Virus record (IMG/VR): IMGVR_UViG_3300043399_000877
Location: 62,001 to 126,000 of that record
DNA: 64,000 nt
Reading direction: 5' to 3' (one strand)
Made by a program: the position numbers and the translations under genes. Positions 13,375 to 43,306 of this stretch are shown piece after piece (the first letter of the stretch is position 1; the number at the start of each line of letters is the position of its first letter). Below the pieces are notes generated by a model. It had not been told where the DNA came from. It made no database searches and was given only the letters and a program-made list of their open reading frames with translations.

Positions 13375-13451
13375 GGGGGATTAGCTCAATTGGTTAGAGC
13401 GCCGGACTCATAATCCGTAGGTTGCTGGTTCAAGTCCTGCATCCCCTACCA
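13375..13451 (+). tRNA. tRNA with CAT anticodon, probably Ile2 (lysidine type) rather than Met
   Basis: Cloverleaf: GGGGGAT/ATCCCCT acceptor stem, CT-CAT-AA loop, TTCAAGT T-loop, encoded CCA. The T arm resembles that of bacterial Ile2. Confidence 0.9.
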
Positions 13452-13455
13452 AAAT

Positions 13456-13538
13456 GGCCCCGTGGTGGAATGGTAGACACTGAAGACTTAAAATCTTCTG
13501 CCAATGGCGTGCCGGTTCGAGTCCGGCCGGGGCTACCA
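13456..13538 (+). tRNA. tRNA-Leu(TAA)
   Basis: GGCCCCG/CGGGGCT acceptor stem, CT-TAA-AA loop, long variable arm, encoded CCA. Confidence 0.93.
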
Positions 13539-13623
13539 TGTCTTTGACGATCACATCAGTCTTCGACGGAGGATCTTCAAAATAAAGTAAATATTGAAGC
13601 CCGTGGTGTGATCTTCTAAGACA
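13539..13623 (+). ncRNA. Candidate structured small RNA within the tRNA cluster
   Basis: TGTCTT/AAGACA and GATCACATCA/TGGTGTGATC closing helices, with an internal CTTCAA/TTGAAG hairpin. Confidence 0.4.
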
Positions 13624-13626
13624 TTC

Positions 13627-13656
13627 GGTTCCTTAGCTCAGCTGGATAGAGCAACT
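13627..13656 (+). pseudogene. 5' remnant of a tRNA (Arg-like)
   Basis: GGTTCCTTAGCTCAGCTGGATAGAGCAACT gives the 5' acceptor strand and D arm, then breaks off into GATAAATAC. Confidence 0.75.
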
Positions 13657-13674
13657 AGATAAATACTTTAAGAC

Positions 13675-13749
13675 GCCTCCGTGGTGAAAGGGATATCACA
13701 CGGGTCTTCTAAACCCAGGTTAGAGGTTCGAATCCTCTCGGGGGCGCCA
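13675..13749 (+). tRNA. tRNA-Arg(TCT)
   Basis: GCCTCCG/CGGGGGC acceptor stem, CT-TCT-AA loop, AGAGG-TTCGAAT-CCTCT T arm, encoded CCA. Confidence 0.9.
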
Positions 13750-23401: not shown

Positions 23402-23464
23402 GAGCACTTGACAAGGCTAGGTGCCCCTGCTATATGTGGGGGCACCAGCATGAGAGGACACGAG

Positions 23465-33558: not shown

Positions 33559-36500
33559 GCGAACTGGGCCAGTGGCAACCGATCAGCCGGGTGCGGGCTC
33601 GGGGCCGGGCCCAGTATGAACTACTGTTCATCGACAGACGGAATCAGATCTGCACCATGACCGTCACCGGCCGGGAACTCACCGAACTCAGCCCGGAGAT
33701 CGAACCGGTAGCTGCGCGACTGACCGAACCGGCACCGGCCGCGGTCCAGTGGCTGGGCACCGTGCTGTGGGATTATGTGCGGGGCCGGGTGGTGCGACAA
33801 GCCCGGCCGGCGGATCCGGTGGTGTGGGCTGACATCGGCTGCACCCCGGCGGGAGAACCCCGCATACGATACCGACCCCGAACCGGAGAACAAAAGTGAA
33901 GCACCCGCAGATCGCTATACCCATCACCGTCCAGGTGTCATCCAGCATATACCGGGAAGTGGCCGAAAGCATCCTGGAAGACCAACCCCTGGACCACGAA
34001 CTGTTGAACACCGACTGGGACACCATGTGTGACCGTCTGGCAGCCGGGGCAGAATTCCAGCGAACGGTTCAGGAACACATCCGGGATCGACTGAACACGG
34101 ACTGGCGCCCGGAGGTCTGGGATTTCATAGACGTGGGCGAGTTGGAACAGATCGCACTCAGTGACCGCATGACCGAAACCGCCTGGCTGACCGAAGCCAT
34201 CGCGTTGAGCGAACAGCACTGGGAGGCGGTGGAACACCAGCGCCGGCTCTTGCAGGAAGCCGAGGCCGAGGAACGAATCACCAGCCAGCGAGCGATAAAT
34301 CAGCATCTGGTGGAACAATTGCGCGCCCAAGGCTATGTGGTCTACGAGAAACCCCGGAGGCGAAAGAAACGATGAAGCGATTAAAAAAAATTGCCGAGAT
34401 TGAACCGCGCACGGCACCACCGGTATACCGAAGACGGCCGGGACAGAGTCCGCAACTGGTTCGGTGGTTGACTGAAACCGAACTGTCCGCCGCCCAACAA
34501 CGCATAGCAGAACGATATCGGGATCATCTGGTAGCACGTTTGCACCCGCGCTGGGCACTGGTGGAACTATACATAGACCCCGCTGTTGTTCCGGAATCGG
34601 AATGGACCATCATTAACATACTGTTCAAACAATGATCTACACTCCACCCATCCGAATCTATCGGAGAAATGATCCGATCTCCGAACCGCAACTCCAGCAA
34701 TTGCGGACCATTCTGGGCCGTCAGAGCCGGGCGGCGGGAGTGATTAGCCAAGAACAATACGGCAACGACTTACAGTATTGGGTGGTGATATTCAATTGGC
34801 ATCTCGTAGAGGAGTCACGTCAATTGATGGTTGAACAGATAATAGACCCCGCTGCTGGCCGACCTCAACGGCCGGTGGATCTCCAAAGTTGGATTCGTTC
34901 ATATATAAAATTTTGTGATAAGATTGGTGGGTCTACAACTGACGACGATTTTAGATCGATGATGGAGTCCGAGCGTCAACGCTGGAGCACGATTCTCAGT
35001 CGAGTAAAGAAATTTGAAAAAATAACGTCAGAGTCCATACTTTAAAGGAAAGCGGTCGGAATGCTATACACAACCAGTGAAAATCACCAATACAGACCGG
35101 GCGCGGGTCCGGTTCCCAAAAAATGGATAGAAACAGATCAGAGCCCGGAGGACGCCATACTGGACTATCTAGAACGTCGAGTAAGAGTCTGGGATGCAGA
35201 TCGTGCCGGTGACCGGACTGTGGACTTCCGGTTCGAGGACGGATCGGACTGGCGTCTACACTATGACTGGAGTGTAAATGATACCGGCTGGTATACTGAT
35301 GAGTCGGGTGAACAACCGTGGATAGTGGACGAATACCGTATAGAACGGATCAGTCCAGAACAGAGCCAGATCCGGGATCGAACACCCGGACGTGACTGGA
35401 TGTAACCGACGGTGACTGACCGGCGGGGAACCACTGACGGAGTATCGGAAAACCCCGGAAAGATCCGAAAACCATTGAAGGAGTATTTGACTATGCCTGT
35501 GGTTCGTCCGGTCTTCATTTCTGGCAGAAACCCACAGCGTCCGCTGGTGCGTAGGCTGTCCACCGGTCTGACCGGCAGATCCGGTGTGGCGTCCGTCACA
35601 CACCCGAGATGAATTTCGTATTTCAGCCTATTTATACTTGACATCCTGTGATGTTGGACAGCCTGTCTAGCAGCCCTAGAAAACTTTGTCTAACGGTGAA
35701 AAACCACTAGACATGCCGGCCTGGGTCGTGTATACGTGACGACATGACGTAACACACGGCAGAGGAGATACACCGTGGAACATGAAAAGGAAATTCGTGA
35801 GGCCATCCAGGCCATCGGCCGTGCGTGTGACCGTGCCGTGGAGAGCTTCGACCGTATGACTGCCGAAGGCGGCATGGCCGTGGCGCTGGAAGCGGCCGAA
35901 GATGTGTCGGCCATCGGCGTTCGGTATCAGCGCCTGCACGAGATCCTTCAGGCTCAGGCTGCTCGCTCGATCGAACGCATCCTGAACGAGCTGGGGATCC
36001 GGGACCAGCAGTCGGACCGGGAACTGGAGGCCGATGGGAATGTGGTGACCTTCCCGGGTCGGCTCAACTAAGACCCCGCTGCTGGGTATCTGACCGTATC
36101 GATCTCTAACCCCGCTGCTGGTGTTTTTGCTATTGACACTGGCGCGGGGGCCTGCTATAACAGTCGGGTAATGCAAGGGAGCAACTGACATGGACTATGA
36201 GACTGCGCGACGTGTATTCGGTTCGCTGGCTGGCGGAACGTTCGTGGGTATCGATACGCTCACCGATGTTAAGCTCACCGGTGGCCGGTCGAACCCGCAA
36301 CAGGGTCGCGTCCGTAAACGGATGACCGGTGCCCAGGTGATGGTGTTCAGCAACCTTCAGACCAATGCCTATGAGGCGATGGTGCGCCGCCGTCTGGCCG
36401 AAGAAGGACGTGATCCGGATTCGTTTGAATTGGGGCCCAGGGCCTGGGGCACTCGCGTCGCCGGCACGCCGTTCGTGGAGCACCGTGGCCAGTATTATCT

Positions 36501-36699
36501 GGAAACCATTTTCCTCCGAGCGGGATCGGTCCAGTATGAACTGGATGGTGAACCGATTGATCCCGAAGACATTCAGGGACTGCCCGAACGTCGCGAATCG
36601 GAGGCGGGTCAGGCCGGACTGGAACGTCGGGTGGTGATCCGGACTTTTGCGCTGGACTCGATCATCGGATTGCGAGCGCACGGGGTGCAATGGCCCTGA
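33555..36699 (+). CDS. Seven hypothetical proteins (33555-33899, 33896-34375, 34372-34635, 34632-35045, 35061-35405, 35775-36071, 36190-36699)
   Basis: Overlapping junctions, SDs and promoters. Confidence 0.65.
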
Positions 36700-36787
36700 A
36701 CCGGTTCTGGGTTCGGGACTGATTGAACTGACACTATAACTGGGGCTGGCAGGGTTGTCAAGCCCCAGTTAATCCATTTTCTGATAT

Positions 36788-36846
36788 AGGTCTTTTCACT
36801 CAGACCTCCGTGCCCTCCCCTCCCGGCGCTCCTAAGCCGGTCGTCC
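36788..36846 (-). ncRNA. Candidate small RNA, copy 1
   Basis: Minus-strand TTGACA(36880-36875)-N17-TAGACA promoter; two hairpins joined by GAGGGGAGGGCACGG; covaries with copy 2. Confidence 0.65.
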
Positions 36847-37066
36847 AGTCCTGTCTAGCATATGCTGTCGGGCGTGTCAATAGGAAAAAAGTCGGTTTTC
36901 TATAAAAAACCTCTTGCAATGCTGGCCGGCCTCCGCTATAAGGGTGGAGTGTTGAGGATGATGCGACAGACGGTGCTGCAAAATAAAACGCCGTAAACGC
37001 AAAAAAACACTTGACACTGTCCAAACCCCGCGTTATACATAACGCACCGCAACAAGGAGCAAGGCA

Positions 37067-37603
37067 ATGAGCGTTAACAATAACTTTTCGGTCGTCGGCG
37101 TGTCGCGTCAGTTCGGCAAACTGAAGATCCGTATGGCGAACGACCGTGCGTGGCGTGAGTTCATGCTGACCAAAGAGGGTCACGTGGATATCCAGCTGCT
37201 GGACCTCGGCACTGTGATGCCCAAGGAACGGGCGATCGAGCTGGCGATGGCTGCAACTGCCATCCAGGAGGACGGCTCGCTGGCGCCGGTGTTTGGCGAA
37301 GAAGCGCAGGAGGTGTTCCGCGCTTACTTGATCAGCAAGGGCATCATCGAGCGCCCGAAGCGCAAGCGCGGCCGCCCGGCGAAGGCTGCTGACGAGCCCG
37401 TGACGAGCGAGGCTGAGGCGCCCCAGCAGGAGCCCGTGGCTGAGCTGCCCGAGCAGGAGACGCCCGCTGAAGAGCCCGCAGCGCCGGCGCTGACCGTGGA
37501 CGACATGCCCAAACGCGACGAGAAAGGCCGGCTGCTGAGCCGTGCGGCGCGTGAGGCGCTGCTGGCGGAGCGGCTGGGGGTGACGGAGGGGGAGGTGGCG
37601 TAA
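37067..37603 (+). CDS. AT-hook DNA-binding protein with acidic/Pro-rich tail, paralog A
   Basis: PKRKRGRPAK; aligns with 37992..38426. Confidence 0.8.
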   Translation: MSVNNNFSVVGVSRQFGKLKIRMANDRAWREFMLTKEGHVDIQLLDLGTVMPKERAIELAMAATAIQEDGSLAPVFGEEAQEVFRAYLISKGIIERPKRKRGRPAKAADEPVTSEAEAPQQEPVAELPEQETPAEEPAAPALTVDDMPKRDEKGRLLSRAAREALLAERLGVTEGEVA

Positions 37604-37629
37604 GCCCCAACCCACCGACATAACACAAC

Positions 37630-37670
37630 AGGACAGCGGTGTCAAGCGCCGCTGTCCTTTTTCTTTCTGT
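37630..37670 (+). terminator. Rho-independent terminator
   Basis: AGGACAGCGG...CCGCTGTCCT followed by TTTTCTTT. Confidence 0.8.
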
Positions 37671-37678
37671 TCTTCAGT

Positions 37679-37737
37679 AGATCTTTTCAGGCAGACCTCC
37701 GTGCCCTCCCCTCCGGGTGCTAGTAAACCCGTCGTCC
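37679..37737 (-). ncRNA. Candidate small RNA, copy 2
   Basis: Minus-strand TTGACA(37771-37766)-N17-TAGACA promoter; same architecture as copy 1, with compensatory changes. Confidence 0.65.
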
Positions 37738-37991
37738 AGTTCTGTCTAGCAGATCGTCAGGGCCATGTCAATAACAAAAAGTTCGGTTTTTCTATAAAAA
37801 AGCTGTTGACTTGCTGGCCAGGGTTCAGTATAAGGACGGCATGGAAGCAACGAAACACGGACGACGCTGCAAAGCAACGCTGCACAAAATAAATGCGCTG
37901 GCAATGCAAACTGTCCTAAATTAGTTGTTGACATATTGAACCCCAGGTGCTATACAGACAGCACTGCAACACACAGAGAGAGGACTACAAG

Positions 37992-38426
37992 ATGACCAAG
38001 ATTTACAACGCCGCCGGTGTTTCCCGTGTCCGTGCTGACCAGCCGTTCAAGCTGCGTATGGCCACCGACATCGAATGGCGCCGGTTCGACCTGGCCCGCG
38101 GGCAGCACGTGGATGTGACGCTGGTCACGCTGCCCGAGTCGATGGACAAGATCCAGGCTGTCCAGTTCCTGCAGACGGCGCCGGAGTTTGTGGACAACGC
38201 CGAAGCGCAGGCCGTGTTCACTGCCTACTTGATGAGCAAGGGCGTGATCGAAAAGCCCAAGAAGAAGCGCGGCCGCCCGGCCAAGGCGAAGGTGGAGGAG
38301 GCTGCTGGCACCGAGGCGCCGGCTGCTGACGGGCTCGGCGACGAGCTGGTTGACGCTGCTGCCGAGACGCCGGCCGTGCAGGCGGTGGTGGAAGAGAACA
38401 CCGCCGAGTTCGAGCCCGAGCACTGA
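37992..38426 (+). CDS. AT-hook DNA-binding protein with acidic tail, paralog B
   Basis: PKKKRGRPAK; shares GVSR..K.RMA.D..WR.F.L...HVD...EAQ.VF.AYL.SKG.IE with paralog A. Confidence 0.8.
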   Translation: MTKIYNAAGVSRVRADQPFKLRMATDIEWRRFDLARGQHVDVTLVTLPESMDKIQAVQFLQTAPEFVDNAEAQAVFTAYLMSKGVIEKPKKKRGRPAKAKVEEAAGTEAPAADGLGDELVDAAAETPAVQAVVEENTAEFEPEH

Positions 38427-38551
38427 TGCAGGCAGGGGCGGCATTATAGTGCCGCCCCACCCACTTGTCAATAGCAAGAAAAAACTTTTTTGTTATTGAC
38501 AGTTGGGAACGGTTGCAGTATACAGATGGAACTGTAACACAGGAGCACACG

Positions 38552-41500
38552 ATGGCACAGGACGACGAAGTTAAGACGATCCACAACCGCCCGGCCGGCA
38601 ACTATAACGCTCGCTGGGATGCAATCGCCCGCAGCCGCGAGGCGCTGGATCAGCACGCCGACTTCTTCAGCGACCCCGAGCACCAGCGCCGCGTCGACGC
38701 CGTTCGCGCTGTCCTCGACGACTTCTTGCCGATCCGCAAGGAGCTCTACGTGAATCGGCGCGGGCTCAACACGAAGAAGCCGCGCACGGTGATCAAAGTG
38801 GAGTCGCCGCAGTTCCCCAACCACCTGCCGCGCAGCGAGCGTGAGGCTCGCTATCACAAGCCCCTGCGAGACCTGGGCGTTGAGATCAAGCTCAGCGTCA
38901 ACACCAACAGTTATTTGTATTCGATCGCATAAAAGTGCTTGACACTGGTGCCGGCGGCTGCTATGTTGCCGGCATACAGACAGAGGAGACAACGATGGCG
39001 ATGAAACAAAACAAGTTCACGACCCGCAAGTTCGACGGTGATAGCCAGGGATCCTGGGCTGTGTTCCGCAAGGCGGATGTGAAGGGCATCCGCGGCGTGG
39101 TGTTCTATGGGCAGGCCCGTCCGATTGTATGTGGGCTGACGAAGCGCGAGGCAGATTACTATCGCTCGCGCTGTGATGAAGGGCATTACCTCTAAAATAA
39201 GTGTTGACACGGGCCACGGCCCGTGTTACTACACTGACACAACGGCAAAACAAGGAGCAAATTACATGGACGAGCGTCAGAAGGCAGCGATGGAGTTCCT
39301 GGCCGAGGAACTCAGCCGCGAGCTGGAGTTCCAACAGTCAGACGAGTATCTGGGCGACGACATCGTGCCGTTGCTTCGCGAGATGCAGGAGCGCATCGAA
39401 CGCAACGACATTCCCACGCTGGCAGAGCTCGAGGCGTGGAGCCTGCGGGTGTATGATGTGACACGCGGCGACGCGATGTATGGCGACACTGACATGGCGG
39501 ACGGGCTCGTGGAGGGGCTGGCGGCGGCGCTGGAGTTGACTGAAGAAACTGCTTGACACTGACGCCCAGTCCTGCTATTGATGTGGGACTGGGCAACACA
39601 GGAGGCTGGCATGCGCTACTATCGAGTGAGAGCAGAGCACGTTCGGCAGCTGGCAATCGGGCTGGCTGCTGAGCAGATGGAGGAGATCCCGGGCGTGATC
39701 CTCATGGCGGCCGGGGCGGATGAGGTGTTCGATCGTCAGGCAATCTGGGTGCTGGCAAGCGAGCTGGCGCTGGGCAATCAGCTTCAGGACATCGTGTGGC
39801 GCTATAACGGCGGCAACTGGTGCGAGGTGGCTGAGATCGACGAGGAGACTGCTGAAGGCTTTTGTTGAAAAAAGTGGTTGACACTGGCTCTGGCTGATGC
39901 TATAACTGGAGCATGGAAACAACGGAGGCGACGATGACGCTGACAAGGGAACAGGTTGTGGCGCTGGTGACCCGGACCGATGCGGTGGCGATGCATGCCA
40001 TCGGCCGTGCGCTGGTGCACTTGTTGAACCGTCAGACGCGCGAGGAGAGCCGCGATAATGTGACGCGCAACCTCAACGACGTGGGCTTCACGCCCGCCGA
40101 TGCGCGCATGGGTTGCATCCACGCCAAATGCTACATCAAGCGCGGCGAGCTCGAGGAATGGCAGGTTCGCTACTGGCAGCGGCCCAACGCCAAAGGCGTA
40201 CCGCGTATCGCCAAGTATTGGCGACAGCTGGCCGAGGAAGCGGCGCGGAAAGCGGTTGCAAGGGCGGCCGCTTGATGCTATACTGGTCGGGCAACACGAG
40301 GAGACACCGATGGAACTAGATATCGCCGAGATCGTCGCCGCCCTGCAAGCTCACCTCCAGACGGCCACTGTGGTCAACGGCTGGCGCTATCCGGTCGAGC
40401 AGGTCATCTGCGCGGACGGCGCCCGCTTCAGCGTCCAGGCCAGCCGGTATACCTACTGCCAGCCGCGCAACGATGTCGGGCCCTGGACGCACGTCGAGGT
40501 GATGACCATCACCGATGGGGTCACGCCCAGCTGCTGGACTCACGACGCCGGGGACAATCTGGCCGGCTATGTGCCGATCGAAGCCGTTGCGAAAGAAATT
40601 TGGCTTCGTGGAAAAAAGCTCTTGACTGGCACTGACATTCCTGCTATCACGTGTGAGTAGGCAACAAGGAGCAACGACGATGAAAGTGACGCGCAAAAAT
40701 CCGTTCACCGGCCAGATGCTGACCCGTGAGATCCCCGTGACCGAGGAGCAACTGATGGCCTGGCAGGATGGGGAGCTGATCCAGAATGCCATGCCCAACA
40801 TCAGCGCGGAAGACCGCGAGTTCATCAAGAGCGGCATCACGGCCGAGCAATGGGAAGAAATGTTCGGCTGACGGCAAAATAACGGTTGACTCCCGGAAGG
40901 GAGTCAGCTATACCACTGACATGGAAAACAGGAGAGCAAGATGTTCGGATACAAGAAAGTCGGAACGGTCAAGACCTTCGAAGCCACGGTGCGGGCCGGG
41001 ATGGCGCTCACCAAAGTGACTGTCAATGCCGACAGCACCTATGCGGCGCGCAAGCAATTGGAGGGCATCTACGGTGCCAACAACGTCAAGAGTGTTCGCC
41101 AACTCTGAAGAAAGTGGTTGACTCCCGGAAGGGAGTCAGCTATACCACTGACATGGAAGCAAGGAGCAACGAGATGGACACTGGTTGGAGACTGGCCACC
41201 AAGGAAGAGATCCGGGAGATGCAGGATCTCCCTGGCGCGCCGCATGTGACTTTCGGCTGCACCTGCTGCGGCATGGTGAACTGGACTGCCAAGAACCTCG
41301 CGCTGAACAGCGACGGTCGCTACACCGGAGCTCGCAACATCTTCGTGAGCGACTGGACTCGCGGCGAGTGTGAGTGCCCCAGCACCCACCTGCGGGCCGT
41401 GGTGCGGGAAAAAGAATCCGTCCTGGCCTAAGAAAGTGGTTGACTCCCGGAAGGGAGTCAGCTATAACACTGACATGGAAGCAAGGAGCAACGAGATGAC

Positions 41501-43306
41501 CGACACTGTGAACCCGGAACTGAAGCCCGTCACCGAGATCCGTGACGAGATGCTGGCCGCGGCGCGTGATGCCGCCAACCGCAAGTTCGCCGAGATCGGC
41601 GGCGACCGCTACGCCTGCGGCTTTGCGTGGGTGACTGTTTACCCCAAACACAAGGGCAACACGCGGGCGGGCCGCGCCGAGCGCGAGACGCTGCGGGCGA
41701 TGGGCTTTGAGCTGGACTACACCGGCAAGGCGTTCCAGCTCTGGAACCCCAGCAACCACTCCTGTCAGAACGTGGACACCAAGGAGGCCGGCGCACAGGC
41801 TGCGGCTTCGGTGCTGCGCCGCTACGGGATCGAGGCCTGGGCGGGGTCGCGACTGGACTGAAAATAACTGTTGACACGGGCTCCATGCAGTGCTATAAGT
41901 GCTGCATGGAAACAACGGAGGCACGGATGCGCGCTTACGATCCCCGAGACGGTTACTTTACCTACAACCCCCAGACCCGGACCTTCAGCGCCGATGCCAG
42001 CGACCTCGCCTGGCCCGCGGGTTCGGCCTGCTATGAGTTCCAGCTCAAGAGCGAGCTCACCGGCACGTTCGTCAACATGGAGCGCATCGATCCCACGCGG
42101 AATGCCGAGGGCGAGATCCTGTGGTTCAACTACCGCAGCCGGTGCATCACCAGCGAAGATCCCACAGTGGATCTCCATCAGACCTATTATGCGAGGGTGT
42201 TCAACGACTGAAGAAAGTGGTTGACATCCAGGTCGGCATCCGCTAGGGTGCCGACATACAACGAGGAGCAGACGGATGGACGAGTTCATGACAGAGTTGG
42301 TGCCGGTTGCTGAGTGGGAATGGTGGTTGTGGCGCGTGACCTATAGGAGCGAATTCGGCGACAGTCAATCGTTTTTTGTGGTCAGCACCGAAGATCATCT
42401 GGACCTCGAAGTCGAGGACCGTTGGCCCAGCGATTGGTTCACCGAATACACATACGAGAAGATGTCGCGCTGTGGCGCTCCCCGGCAGCTCTGGTGTGCT
42501 GCTCGCAAGTGCCGGTATCCGGAATACGCCTGGGACGCTGGTGCCCGCGAGGCCGCTCGTCTCGGCTTCCAGATCACCGACCCGCAGCCGGAGATTTATG
42601 CCGAACTGGCATAAAAAACTGTTGACAGCTGGCAGACGGTCAGCTATACACATGACATGGAAGCAAAGAGGAGCAACAAGATGCGACCAGTGATTATGAA
42701 AGCCGGCACCTACTACATCGGTGACCTGTGCTATGTGCTGCACGACAGCTGGGATGAAGTTTGCAGCCTGATTATTCAGGGGCAGGCGGTGCTGGAGGGC
42801 CACTTCACCCTCAAAGACGGCCGCGAGTTCGCCATGTTCAACACCGCCTACGGCGATGGCACCTACACCGACAACCTGGGCGGGCGCTATCCGGTGGACG
42901 CCGGCAACATCGGCTGCATCTTGCTGGAGTCGGTGGACCGCTCGGATCAGGACGACGTCACGTTGGGCGTGACGCACACCTTCGATGCGGACTTTGTCTG
43001 CGACACCGACGGGCGCACCATCGAGTTCGGCAGTATCCGGATCCCAACCGCAGACGACGAGGACGACTGGGAAGATGACGACCTTTACGACGACTGGGAA
43101 GAAGATTTGTTCGACGAGCCCTGATTCTGCTTGACACTGTTGCCGGCAACTGTTATGTTGCCGGCACACAGGGAGGACGTGATGGACGAACAAGACGACT
43201 ACTTTTCCGAGACTACCGAAGGTCGCTGGACTGCCGGTTGGTGGATCGTGCCCAGTGTGATCCTGGGGGTAGTGATGCTGGTCGGACTCGGCTGGTGGAT
43301 AGCGTA
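38552..43306 (+). CDS. Fourteen monocistronic small hypothetical genes (38552-38932, 38995-39195, 39266-39556, 39611-39868, 39934-40275, 40309-40660, 40680-40871, 40941-41108, 41174-41431, 41496-41861, 41927-42211, 42276-42614, 42681-43124, ~43181-43306)
   Basis: Each is preceded by its own -35/-10 promoter and SD. Confidence 0.75.
40884..41498 (+). repeat. Three near-identical promoter/RBS cassettes (40884-40926, 41108-41176, 41430-41498)
   Basis: GGTTGACTCCCGGAAGGGAGTCAGCTATA(C/A)CACTGACATGGAA; copies 2 and 3 match at 68 of 69 nt. Confidence 0.95.

What the first reader, a model, noticed from the sequence alone, without database searches (positions are those of the whole stretch)
36733..38471. 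Antisense promoters hidden in the terminator hairpins of three consecutive genes
Seen: minus-strand promoters TTGACA(36761-36756)-N17-TATAGT, TTGACA(37645-37640)-N17-TATGTC and TTGACA(38471-38466)-N17-TATAAT. Each overlaps the hairpin just downstream of 36190..36699, 37067..37603 and 37992..38426 and fires back into that gene, with no credible minus-strand CDS. Inference: built-in antisense or convergent-transcription control of possibly toxic genes, including the two AT-hook proteins.
Basis: partly seen in the sequence, partly recalled or inferred. Interest (0 to 1): 0.6.

Follow-up and report, generated by a model that had tools for sequence, protein, structure and literature searches.

The report
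Conserved antisense promoters behind phage early genes
Three promoter-like sites facing backwards into three neighbouring early genes of a giant phage are real and kept in nine related phage genomes. They belong to a larger five-promoter antisense system that also appears to make a small conserved RNA, but no transcription data could be obtained.

Summary
The motifs are at the stated coordinates. The window is bases 62001-126000 of a 382-kb jumbo-phage record. Window 10-48 kb is an early-gene block with about 50 sense sigma70-type promoters and only 6 antisense ones, five of them within 36761-38471.

All three sites recur in nine syntenic phage genomes: -35 TTGACA 27/27, 17-bp spacer 26/27, A-11 27/27, T-12 26/27, T-7 21/27. 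The middle of the -10 and the hairpin stems drift. The predicted start always lies 5-27 nt past the stop codon.

Each precedes a conserved unit of about 110 nt: a covarying 5' hairpin, an invariant 20-nt box and a second hairpin. There are 24 such units in the nine genomes.

Site 3 is a box-less copy of the same promoter type. Its hairpin lacks a U-tract, so it is not a canonical terminator.

Most likely these promoters drive antisense and convergent transcription against the three genes, as lambda pO-OOP does for cII. The only runs holding relatives were wastewater assemblies that are probably DNA, so activity is inferred. Toxicity of the genes is unsupported.

The parts
36190..36699 (+). Gene A (169 aa, no known family). 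Target of antisense site 1. Own promoter: -35 at 36133-36138, -10 at 36156-36161.
   Evidence: ORF, RBS and promoter. Orthologue of 169 aa in 7 of 8 related loci. No family hit.
36737..36771 (+). HP1: hairpin after gene A (11-bp stem, -23.6 kcal/mol as plus RNA, weak T-tract). Its loop holds the -35 of site 1.
   Evidence: Orthologous hairpins in 8 relatives come in two stem versions.
36733..36761 (-). Predicted start about 36726, 27 nt past the stop codon.
   Evidence: PWM 12.6. In nine genomes: -35 9/9, T-12 and A-11 9/9, T-7 8/9.
36730..36845 (-). Predicted non-coding 'box RNA' unit 1. It comprises SL1 36840-36823, the invariant box 36819-36800 (minus sense GGGAGGGCACGGAGGTCTGA), SL2 36807-36788, an A-rich linker and HP1.
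   Evidence: Its ends are predicted, not measured.
36852..36880 (-). P(-)1: TTGACA-N17-TAGACA with TG extension and a T/A-rich upstream tract. Predicted start about 36845.
   Evidence: PWM 22.7, equal to the median of true sense promoters. Conserved in 9/9 genomes.
36914..37039 (+). Tandem sense promoters of AT-hook gene 1. P1 is TTGCAA 36914-36919 / TATAAG 36937-36942, back-to-back with P(-)1. P2 is TTGACA 37011-37016 / TATACA 37034-37039.
   Evidence: PWM 22.4 for P1; P2 is in the training set.
37067..37603 (+). AT-hook protein 1 (178 aa; KRKRGRPAKA at residues 98-109). Target of site 2.
   Evidence: Pfam AT_hook 18.7 bits against a cutoff of 17.4. 59 relatives without annotation.
37630..37658 (+). 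HP2: canonical intrinsic terminator of AT-hook gene 1 (13 pairs, followed by TTTTTCTTTCT). Its loop holds the -35 of site 2.
   Evidence: Four different stem versions in nine genomes, always with TTGACA.
37617..37645 (-). Predicted start about 37610, 7 nt past the stop codon.
   Evidence: PWM 15.2. In nine genomes: -35 9/9; TA at N17 in 8/9 and at N18 in 1/9; TGn in 7 of 9 by reading the rows.
37620..37736 (-). Predicted 'box RNA' unit 2. It comprises SL1 37731-37714, the box 37710-37691, SL2 37698-37679, a linker and HP2.
37743..37771 (-). P(-)2: TTGACA-N17-TAGACA with TG extension. Predicted start about 37736.
   Evidence: PWM 22.7. Conserved in 9/9 genomes.
37806..37956 (+). Tandem sense promoters of AT-hook gene 2. 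P1 is TTGACT 37806-37811 / TATAAG 37829-37834. P2 is TTGACA 37928-37933 / TATACA 37951-37956.
   Evidence: PWM 27.7 for P1; P2 is in the training set.
37992..38426 (+). AT-hook protein 2 (144 aa; 38% identical paralogue of protein 1). Target of site 3.
   Evidence: Pfam AT_hook 16.8 bits, just under the cutoff.
38435..38458 (.). HP3: GGGGCGGCA / TGCCGCCCC stem-loop with the -10 of site 3 in its loop. No U-tract on either strand.
   Evidence: Two to three compensatory pairs between lineages.
38443..38471 (-). Predicted start about 38436, 10 nt past the stop codon. Same TTGCTATTGACA word as the gene A promoter. Back-to-back with the sense promoter at 38496-38524.
   Evidence: (I1, D20). In nine genomes: -35 9/9, A-11 and T-7 9/9, T-12 8/9.

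Best explanation
The three sites are real, selected sigma70-type promoters on the strand opposite an early-gene block of a jumbo phage. They are part of a five-promoter minus-strand system spanning 1.75 kb.

Two strong minus promoters (36880, 37771) stand back-to-back with the sense promoters of the two AT-hook genes. Each most likely makes a non-coding RNA of about 110 nt: a 5' hairpin, an invariant purine-rich 20-nt box and a second hairpin. That RNA runs into the hairpin that also terminates the upstream sense gene.

Polymerase can therefore start again 7-27 nt beyond the stop codon and transcribe antisense to gene A and to AT-hook gene 1. Site 3 is a box-less copy of the same promoter type and fires straight into AT-hook gene 2.

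The expected effect is convergent transcription (polymerase collisions) plus complementary RNA. This would lower or shut off expression of these three early genes and block read-through between cassettes, much as lambda pO-OOP does for cII.

Shown: the sequences, their statistics, their conservation and the covariation. Inferred: that the promoters fire, where the RNAs end, and what they do.
For: - Strand bias shows that the PWM finds functional promoters: 53 sense against 6 antisense hits in the block, and 113 sense against 4 antisense in 276 kb of related loci, with all 4 antisense hits in the syntenic spot.
- The three sites recur in nine syntenic genomes whose AT-hook 1 proteins are 56-93% identical to the window's. 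The -35 is TTGACA in 27/27, the spacer is 17 bp in 26/27, A-11 is kept in 27/27, T-12 in 26/27 and T-7 in 21/27. The middle of the -10 varies (majority fraction 0.48-0.74). For sites 1 and 2 the other columns are also less conserved (0.65-0.68); around site 3 the whole region is well conserved (0.79). The predicted start is always 5-27 nt after the stop codon.
- Hairpin stems were replaced (four versions at site 2) while TTGACA stayed, at a varying place within the hairpin but at a fixed distance from the TA of the -10.
- The word TT[GC][CT]TATTGACA occurs five times in the 382-kb genome, all here: 36127(+), 36886(-), 37777(-), 38477(-), 38490(+). This ties site 3 and the two P(-) promoters to promoters that drive real genes.
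- In relative L208 the P(-)-type promoter drives an inserted 89-aa minus-strand ORF with AGGAG-N6-ATG, so minus promoters at this locus do serve gene expression.
- There are 24 box units in the nine genomes. Each has a minus promoter, and the box core starts at +23 to +31 from the predicted start.
- SL1 is paired in 97.7% of cells, with 2 pairs showing compensatory change and 11 G.U cells that would be A.C on the plus strand. Slid controls reach at most 53%. SL2 is paired in 93% and 80% of cells in the two clades.
- The non-coding unit is about 85% identical between the two window copies, while the adjacent paralogous proteins are only 38% identical.
Against: - There is no expression evidence. 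The only runs holding related sequence are wastewater assemblies kept as contigs. They are probably DNA and carry no strand or end information.
- On the phage's own PWM the three sites are weak (10.6-15.2, against a median of 22.1 for sense promoters). Some orthologues score below 8.
- The -10 of site 2 lacks T-7 in 5 of 9 genomes.
- The nine genomes form only about 4-5 lineages, so the counts are not independent.
- As minus-sense RNA, HP1 and HP2 have poor U-tracts, so the 3' end of the box RNA is uncertain.
- With only the first 9 copies the consensus fold was weak, and the individual folds showed no consistent strand bias.
- No terminator for the antisense RNAs was found.
- The host is unknown, so use of host sigma70 polymerase is inferred from the motif alone.
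Confidence: 0.55

Rival explanations
1. The minus-strand promoters are leftovers of cassette shuffling. In this phage group, promoter-plus-stem-loop modules (PeSL-like) recombine and can land inverted. On this reading they may or may not fire, but they have no regulatory role for the neighbouring genes.
For: The block is built from repeated promoter and stem-loop cassettes. Site 3 is an inverted copy of the gene A promoter type (I1). L208 shows a minus-strand gene cassette inserted at exactly this place. PeSL-mediated shuffling is documented in T4-type phages (PMC2839356, PMC4122927).
Against: A neutral remnant should decay. Instead the -35 is kept in 27/27 cases and the key -10 positions are kept while stems and spacers diverge. 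Antisense promoter hits are otherwise almost absent from 276 kb of related early regions. The position relative to the stop codon is fixed.
Confidence: 0.2
2. The conserved TTGACA in and next to the hairpins, and the inverted repeat TGTCAATAGCAA-N12-TTGTTATTGACA in the third intergenic region, are binding sites for a protein or a motif read in RNA. Candidates are a phage regulator or sigma region 4 acting as a roadblock. On this reading they are not start sites.
For: The -35 is far better conserved than the -10 hexamer at sites 1 and 2. The 12-nt arms in the third intergenic region are conserved around a variable 12-nt centre in the three genomes aligned. The PWM scores are low.
Against: TTGACA sits at different places in the hairpin (loop, loop plus arm), which argues against loop-specific RNA recognition. 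The 17-bp distance to TA is kept in 26/27 cases, and T-7 and the TG extension are frequent, as expected for a promoter. The same word precedes real genes.
Confidence: 0.12
3. The region is a replication origin or similar DNA-level element. The repeated 20-bp boxes would act as iterons and the A/T tracts as an unwinding element. The flanking promoters would provide transcriptional activation, and the AT-hook proteins would be the DNA binders.
For: There are direct repeats of an invariant 20-bp box in one orientation, 2-4 per locus. There are conserved A/T-rich tracts between divergent promoters. The adjacent genes encode AT-hook DNA-binding motifs.
Against: The boxes are 111 to about 900 bp apart, not in a tight phased array. 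Each box sits at a fixed +23 to +31 from a promoter, and the hairpin upstream of it shows G.U-tolerant covariation typical of RNA. There is no skew change at 37 kb.
Confidence: 0.05
4. Chance matches in a GC-rich region.
For: Sites 1 and 3 score within the range of the best hits in shuffled sequence on the phage-specific PWM.
Against: Clustering, the perfect consensus at site 3, and conservation in nine genomes.
Confidence: 0.03

Closest known systems
Lambda pO-oop-tO (OOP antisense RNA against cII)
   Same: A constitutive sigma70 promoter lies downstream of a phage early gene and points back into it. The RNA overlaps the 3' end of the target (52 nt of cII) and suppresses a dose-sensitive early protein (PMC5869508).
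   Different: OOP is one short RNA with its own terminator. Here three consecutive genes each have such a promoter. The promoter is embedded in the target's own hairpin, no antisense terminator is seen, and two extra promoters make a separate conserved non-coding unit. There is no sequence similarity, and activity is untested.
PeSL cassettes (promoter-early stem-loop) of T4-type phages
   Same: Strong sigma70-like early promoters with an A/T-rich upstream tract and an adjacent G-rich/C-rich stem-loop flank small ORFan genes in a plastic region (PMC2839356, PMC4122927). The third intergenic region here reads as such a module: the 38435-38458 stem-loop, an A/T tract, then the 38496 promoter.
   Different: PeSLs are described as sense-strand terminator/promoter units and recombination sites. 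Here the stem-loop often overlaps the promoter core, with the -10 or -35 in the loop, and mirrored promoters use the other strand. This is a different phage group (a 382-kb jumbo phage), and recombination was not tested.
Engineered terminator/antisense-promoter pairs at gene 3' ends (Brophy and Voigt 2016)
   Same: An antisense promoter placed just after a terminator represses the gene through collisions plus antisense RNA, most strongly when the sense promoter is weak (PMC4731013).
   Different: Those are synthetic constructs in E. coli, with the promoter beside the terminator rather than inside it. Here the arrangement is natural and conserved.
[quoted passage not shown]
   Same: Cis-antisense transcripts that are conserved between diverged phages and proposed to time gene expression (PMC5563952).
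   Different: Those were found by RNA-seq and lie mostly within structural genes. Promoters in hairpins were not described. Here the evidence is sequence only, and the targets are early genes.

Membership tests
Sigma70-type promoter | -35 TTGACA-like and -10 TATAAT-like hexamers 16-18 bp apart | tested here: met
   12/12, 11/12 and 10/12 matches, each with a 17-bp spacer.
Sigma70-type promoter | Fit to the promoters this phage actually uses in front of its genes | tested here: inconclusive
   PWM scores of 12.6, 15.2 and 10.6 against a median of 22.1 for sense promoters. P(-)1 and P(-)2 score 22.7.
Sigma70-type promoter | Purifying selection on -35 and on -12, -11 and -7 | tested here: met
   Nine genomes: -35 27/27, A-11 27/27, T-12 26/27, T-7 21/27. 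The middle of the -10 is variable.
Sigma70-type promoter | A transcript 5' end about 7 nt downstream of the -10 | not testable with these tools
   Only assembled contigs of probable DNA libraries hold the locus.
Intrinsic (rho-independent) terminator | GC-rich stem-loop directly followed by a U-tract on the sense strand | tested here: met
   HP2 is canonical, with 13 pairs followed by TTTTTCTTTCT. HP1 passes the looser scan but was not listed by the tool's terminator scan; its tail is weak (ATCCATTTT). HP3 does not qualify: there is no U-tract on either strand.
Cis-antisense RNA regulator (lambda OOP type) | Promoter downstream of the target, pointing into its 3' end | tested here: met
   Predicted starts are 27, 7 and 10 nt after the stop codons, and 5-27 nt in the relatives.
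Cis-antisense RNA regulator (lambda OOP type) | A defined antisense RNA that lowers target expression | not testable with these tools
   No RNA data. No minus-sense terminator was found inside the three genes.
PeSL cassette | Sigma70-like early promoter, A/T-rich upstream tract and adjacent stable stem-loop, repeated between ORFans | tested here: met
   About 50 such promoters in the block. Stems of 9 bp or more occur in 20% of promoter cores against 4% of random windows.
PeSL cassette | Occurs in T4-type myoviruses and mediates recombination and mini-circles | not tested
   The phage's taxonomy was not determined. The indel of a gene cassette in L208 is compatible with this but is not a test.
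Structured small RNA (the 'box RNA' unit) | Own promoter, conserved sequence and covarying helices | tested here: met
   24 of 24 units have a promoter. SL1 is 97.7% paired, with compensatory and G.U changes. SL2 is 80-93% paired. There is no Rfam match.
AT-hook protein | RGRP core flanked by basic residues | tested here: met
   KRKRGRPAKA scores 18.7 bits, above the 17.4 cutoff. KKKRGRPAKA scores 16.8 bits, just below it.

The most novel reading that the evidence does not exclude
A clade of freshwater and wastewater jumbo phages carries a mirrored transcription grammar on the antisense strand of part of its early region. It would consist of a new family of promoter-coupled small RNAs (an invariant GGGAGGGCACGGAGGUCUGA box at +23 to +31, in 24 copies) and re-start promoters built into the terminators of the sense genes. 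Together these would form a hard-wired switch that shuts off or insulates particular early genes, the AT-hook DNA binders among them.
Probability: 0.3. Interest if true: 0.7.

Novelty: new variant of a known kind. Interest (0 to 1): 0.55.

Why it matters
Antisense control of phage early genes is known from a few model phages, such as lambda OOP and P22 sar. How giant phages time and insulate their many small early genes is largely unknown.

Here a compact arrangement is conserved across nine genomes. Antisense promoters are embedded in the hairpins that end the sense genes, and they are coupled to a repeated small non-coding unit with an invariant box.

If the promoters are active, this would be a natural version of the terminator/antisense-promoter device that synthetic biologists built to tune genes. 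It would also define a new phage small-RNA family with clear, testable 5' ends.

The case also shows that promoters and hairpins overlap systematically in this phage group, which matters for annotating such genomes.

Tried and rejected
- **RNA evidence.** One run search found only three wastewater libraries labelled RNA-Seq. They are kept as contigs and flagged as probably DNA. Laying them on 5,501 bases, under the 6,000 limit, showed 90-99% relatives but no strand, start or end information. One contig starts at 36945, which coincides with the end of the 36787-36943 repeat, so it is an assembly break and not a start site.
- **Rfam.** At gathering threshold only three tRNAs matched. In E-value mode on 36650-38560 there were only sub-threshold chance hits.
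- **The phages collection.** No DNA match.
- **Box pattern in viral contigs.** The 23-mer found nothing. The 17-mer found five unrelated coding hits.
- **Box 17-mer in bacterial genomes.** 120 or more scattered hits; none extends to the 20-mer or has the promoter, so these are chance.
- **Box as a phage-polymerase promoter.** Only two copies exist in the 382 kb, so this is rejected.
- **Box as a sigma54 or ECF-sigma promoter.** Rejected by eye: there is no GC at -12 and no GGAAC at the required spacing. This rests on my own knowledge of the consensus sequences.
- **Small ORF after the SD-like GGAGGT of the box.** A start codon follows in 6-7 of the first 9 copies, but the peptides (2 to over 22 aa) are not conserved, so this is rejected as a gene.
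- **Consensus fold of the first 9 copies.** It was weak, and per-copy folds showed no strand bias. Only the 22-copy alignment gave clear covariation for SL1.
- **Protein function of gene A and the AT-hook proteins.** Pfam, PHROGs, PADLOC, PDB sequences and the ESM Atlas gave nothing beyond AT_hook. Structure prediction was not run.
- **Distant relative L002 (33% identity).** It has a bidirectional terminator but no properly spaced minus promoter.
Full report
**Context.** The window is bases 62001-126000 of a 381,886-bp IMG/VR virus record, that is, a jumbo phage. Window 10-48 kb has 50-60% GC against 37-43% in the flanks. It is packed with small plus-strand genes, and almost every one has its own promoter.

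From 46 of these promoters I derived the phage's own consensus: an A-rich tract, TTGACAc, 13 nt, cTGcTATAa, 6 nt, then gcA at the start site. The -10 is therefore an extended one. The -7 position is not conserved, and CTAGAC is a common variant.

A position weight matrix (PWM) built from them gives true promoters a leave-one-out median score of 22.1. In shuffles of the 39-kb block, the best score has a median of 10.4 and a 95th percentile of 14.9.

The matrix finds functional sites, as the strand bias shows. There are 53 sense against 6 antisense hits above 10 in the block. In 276 kb of 78 related loci there are 113 sense against 4 antisense hits above 14.

**The observation.** Each overlaps a hairpin that begins 9-38 nt after a stop codon.
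- HP1 (36737-36771) and HP2 (37630-37658) hold the -35 in their loops.
- HP3 (38435-38458) holds the -10 in its loop.

On the phage-specific matrix the sites score 12.6, 15.2 and 10.6, so each is marginal alone. Site 3, however, is one of only two perfect TTGACA-N17-TATAAT matches in the whole genome. The six antisense hits in the block are these three, two more at 36880 and 37771, and one at 42368. The long minus ORFs here are the codon-aligned antisense frames of GC-rich sense genes and have no start signals.

The strongest minus-strand promoters are at 36880 and 37771: TTGACA, 14 nt, TG, CTAGACAG, with a T/A-rich upstream tract. Each scores 22.7. Each stands back-to-back with the first of two tandem sense promoters of an AT-hook gene. 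Each lies in a repeat of about 160 nt (36788-36945 and 37679-37840) that is about 85% identical, although the adjacent paralogous proteins are only 38% identical.

The word TT[GC][CT]TATTGACA occurs five times in the 382 kb, all here: the gene A promoter, these two promoters, site 3, and the sense promoter next to site 3. Site 3 is therefore a member of the same promoter sub-family, not a special case.

**Relatives.** A profile scan of metagenome contigs found 77 loci encoding the N-terminal domain of the AT-hook proteins. A protein search then gave a graded series of relatives, from 95% down to 47% identity. Eight syntenic loci with usable DNA were studied: L003, L004, L205, L206, L207, L208, L209 and L210. 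Their AT-hook 1 proteins are 56-93% identical to the window's.

In all nine genomes all three sites are present.
- The -35 is TTGACA in 27/27 cases.
- The spacer is 17 bp in 26/27.
- A-11 is kept in 27/27, T-12 in 26/27 and T-7 in 21/27.
- The three middle bases of the -10 vary freely.
- The predicted start lies 5-27 nt after the stop codon.

The hairpin stems have been replaced or compensated: four versions at site 2, two at site 1 and two at site 3. TTGACA nevertheless stays, at different places within the hairpin but at a fixed distance from the TA of the -10. This is the pattern expected of a promoter under selection, not of a loop read as RNA. Of 84 sense-strand terminator-like hairpins in the block and the 78 loci, only the six orthologues of HP1 and HP2 contain TGTCAA.

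**The non-coding unit.** The nine genomes hold 24 units. Each has a minus-sense promoter followed, at +23 to +31 from the predicted start, by the core GGGCACGGAGGTCTG of an invariant 20-nt box. The box occurs only twice in the window's genome and nowhere else in the loci fetched.

On a 22-copy alignment, a 5' hairpin (SL1) is paired in 97.7% of cells. Two of its pairs show compensatory change, and 11 cells are G.U, which would be A.C mismatches on the plus strand. Slid controls reach at most 53%. The 3' half of the box pairs with a downstream segment (SL2) in 93% and 80% of cells in the two clades.

The unit ends at HP1 or HP2. As minus-sense RNA these hairpins are stable (-20 kcal/mol) but have only a moderate or poor U-tract. 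Some transcripts probably read on into the upstream gene.

There is no conserved ORF and no Rfam match. In relative L208 an 89-aa minus-strand gene with a good ribosome-binding site has been inserted between a P(-)-type promoter and the box unit. Minus-strand promoters at this place are therefore used for expression.

**Hairpins and promoters in general.** Stems of 9 bp or more overlap 20% of the 50 sense promoter cores, against 4% of random 60-nt windows. Often the -10 lies in the loop, as at 23408, 28429, 41871, 42221, 43131 and 44020. It recalls the promoter-early stem-loop (PeSL) cassettes of T4-type phages (PMC2839356, PMC4122927). HP3 has no U-tract on either strand and is better described as such a stem-loop than as a terminator. 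HP2 is a canonical terminator, and HP1 a weaker one.

**Mechanism.** The best-supported reading is a mirrored minus-strand programme. Site 3 gives antisense RNA to AT-hook gene 2. P(-)2 gives box RNA 2, and site 2 gives antisense RNA to AT-hook gene 1. P(-)1 gives box RNA 1, and site 1 gives antisense RNA to gene A.

Convergent transcription and complementary RNA would lower or shut off these early genes and stop read-through. This is what lambda pO-OOP does for cII (PMC5869508), and what engineered terminator/antisense-promoter pairs do in E. coli (PMC4731013). The role of the invariant box is open. It is purine-rich, partly single-stranded in the predicted fold, and contains an SD-like GGAGGU.

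All of this is inference from sequence. The only sequencing runs that hold relatives are wastewater assemblies, probably of DNA, without strand or end information.

**The genes.** Gene A and the two AT-hook paralogues have no known family apart from the AT-hook motif itself. Nothing supports, or excludes, toxicity. One testable idea is that the AT-hook proteins bind the conserved A/T tracts between the divergent promoters and so regulate themselves.

**Verdict.** This is a new variant of a known kind: cis-antisense promoters at gene 3' ends, and promoter/stem-loop cassettes. Its conservation is unusually clear, and it comes with an accompanying small-RNA candidate.

Noticed in passing
window 10000-48500: An early-type block with about 50 plus-strand promoters, roughly one per small gene. 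They are of the extended -10 type (TGcTATAa), have no conserved -7 T, and CTAGAC is a common variant. GC is 50-60% against 37-43% in the rest of the 382-kb phage.
   Followed up: yes
window 12194, 22230, 23408, 28429, 39553, 41871, 42221, 43131, 44020 and others: Sense promoters whose -10 lies in the loop of an 8-12-bp hairpin. Others have the hairpin in the spacer (30061, 39204, 40886, 41118, 41440) or around the -35 (16643, 19155). Stems of 9 bp or more occur in 20% of promoter cores against 4% of random windows. Their purpose is unknown.
   Followed up: partly
window 42334-42368 (minus): A sixth antisense promoter-like site, TTGACT-N17-TATAGG with an A-rich upstream tract (PWM 21.7). It lies inside gene 42276..42614, and its predicted start would give an RNA across that gene's start codon and promoter.
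   Followed up: partly
window 5045, 8889, 9076, 9259, 9327, 34577, 34846, 36073, 36109, 44614 (plus): A strand-specific motif, (T)A(A/T)G-ACCCCGCTG(C/T)T, often at or just after a stop codon. It occurs ten times on the plus strand of the window and once elsewhere in the genome, on the minus strand. L003 and L004 each hold three sense copies; the other 76 related loci hold none. Function unknown.
   Followed up: partly
window 36800-36819 and 37691-37710: An invariant 20-nt box (minus sense GGGAGGGCACGGAGGTCTGA). It occurs only twice in the 382-kb genome but 24 times in nine related genomes, always at +23 to +31 from a minus-strand promoter.
   Followed up: yes
L208 2715-3035 (minus): A close relative (AT-hook 1 93% identical) carries an extra 89-aa minus-strand gene with its own promoter and ribosome-binding site, inserted into the second intergenic region. 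It has no family match.
   Followed up: partly
window 40876-41498: Three copies, 75-99% identical, of a 69-nt promoter plus 5' UTR (TTGACTCCCGGAAGGGAGTCAGCTATAC...) stand in front of three tandem small genes. A fourth, 70% copy lies at 42612.
   Followed up: no
window 13375-13749: Three phage tRNA genes: Met-CAT, Leu-TAA and Arg-TCT.
   Followed up: no
window 47699 (minus) and 47798 (plus): A divergent promoter pair at the right edge of the early block. It includes the genome's only other perfect TTGACA-N17-TATAAT, and the gene orientation switches here.
   Followed up: no
window 36881-36913 and 37772-37805: Conserved A/T-rich tracts (AAAAAGTCGGTTTTCTATAAAAAA) lie between the back-to-back promoters upstream of the two AT-hook genes. 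They are possible binding sites for those proteins.
   Followed up: no
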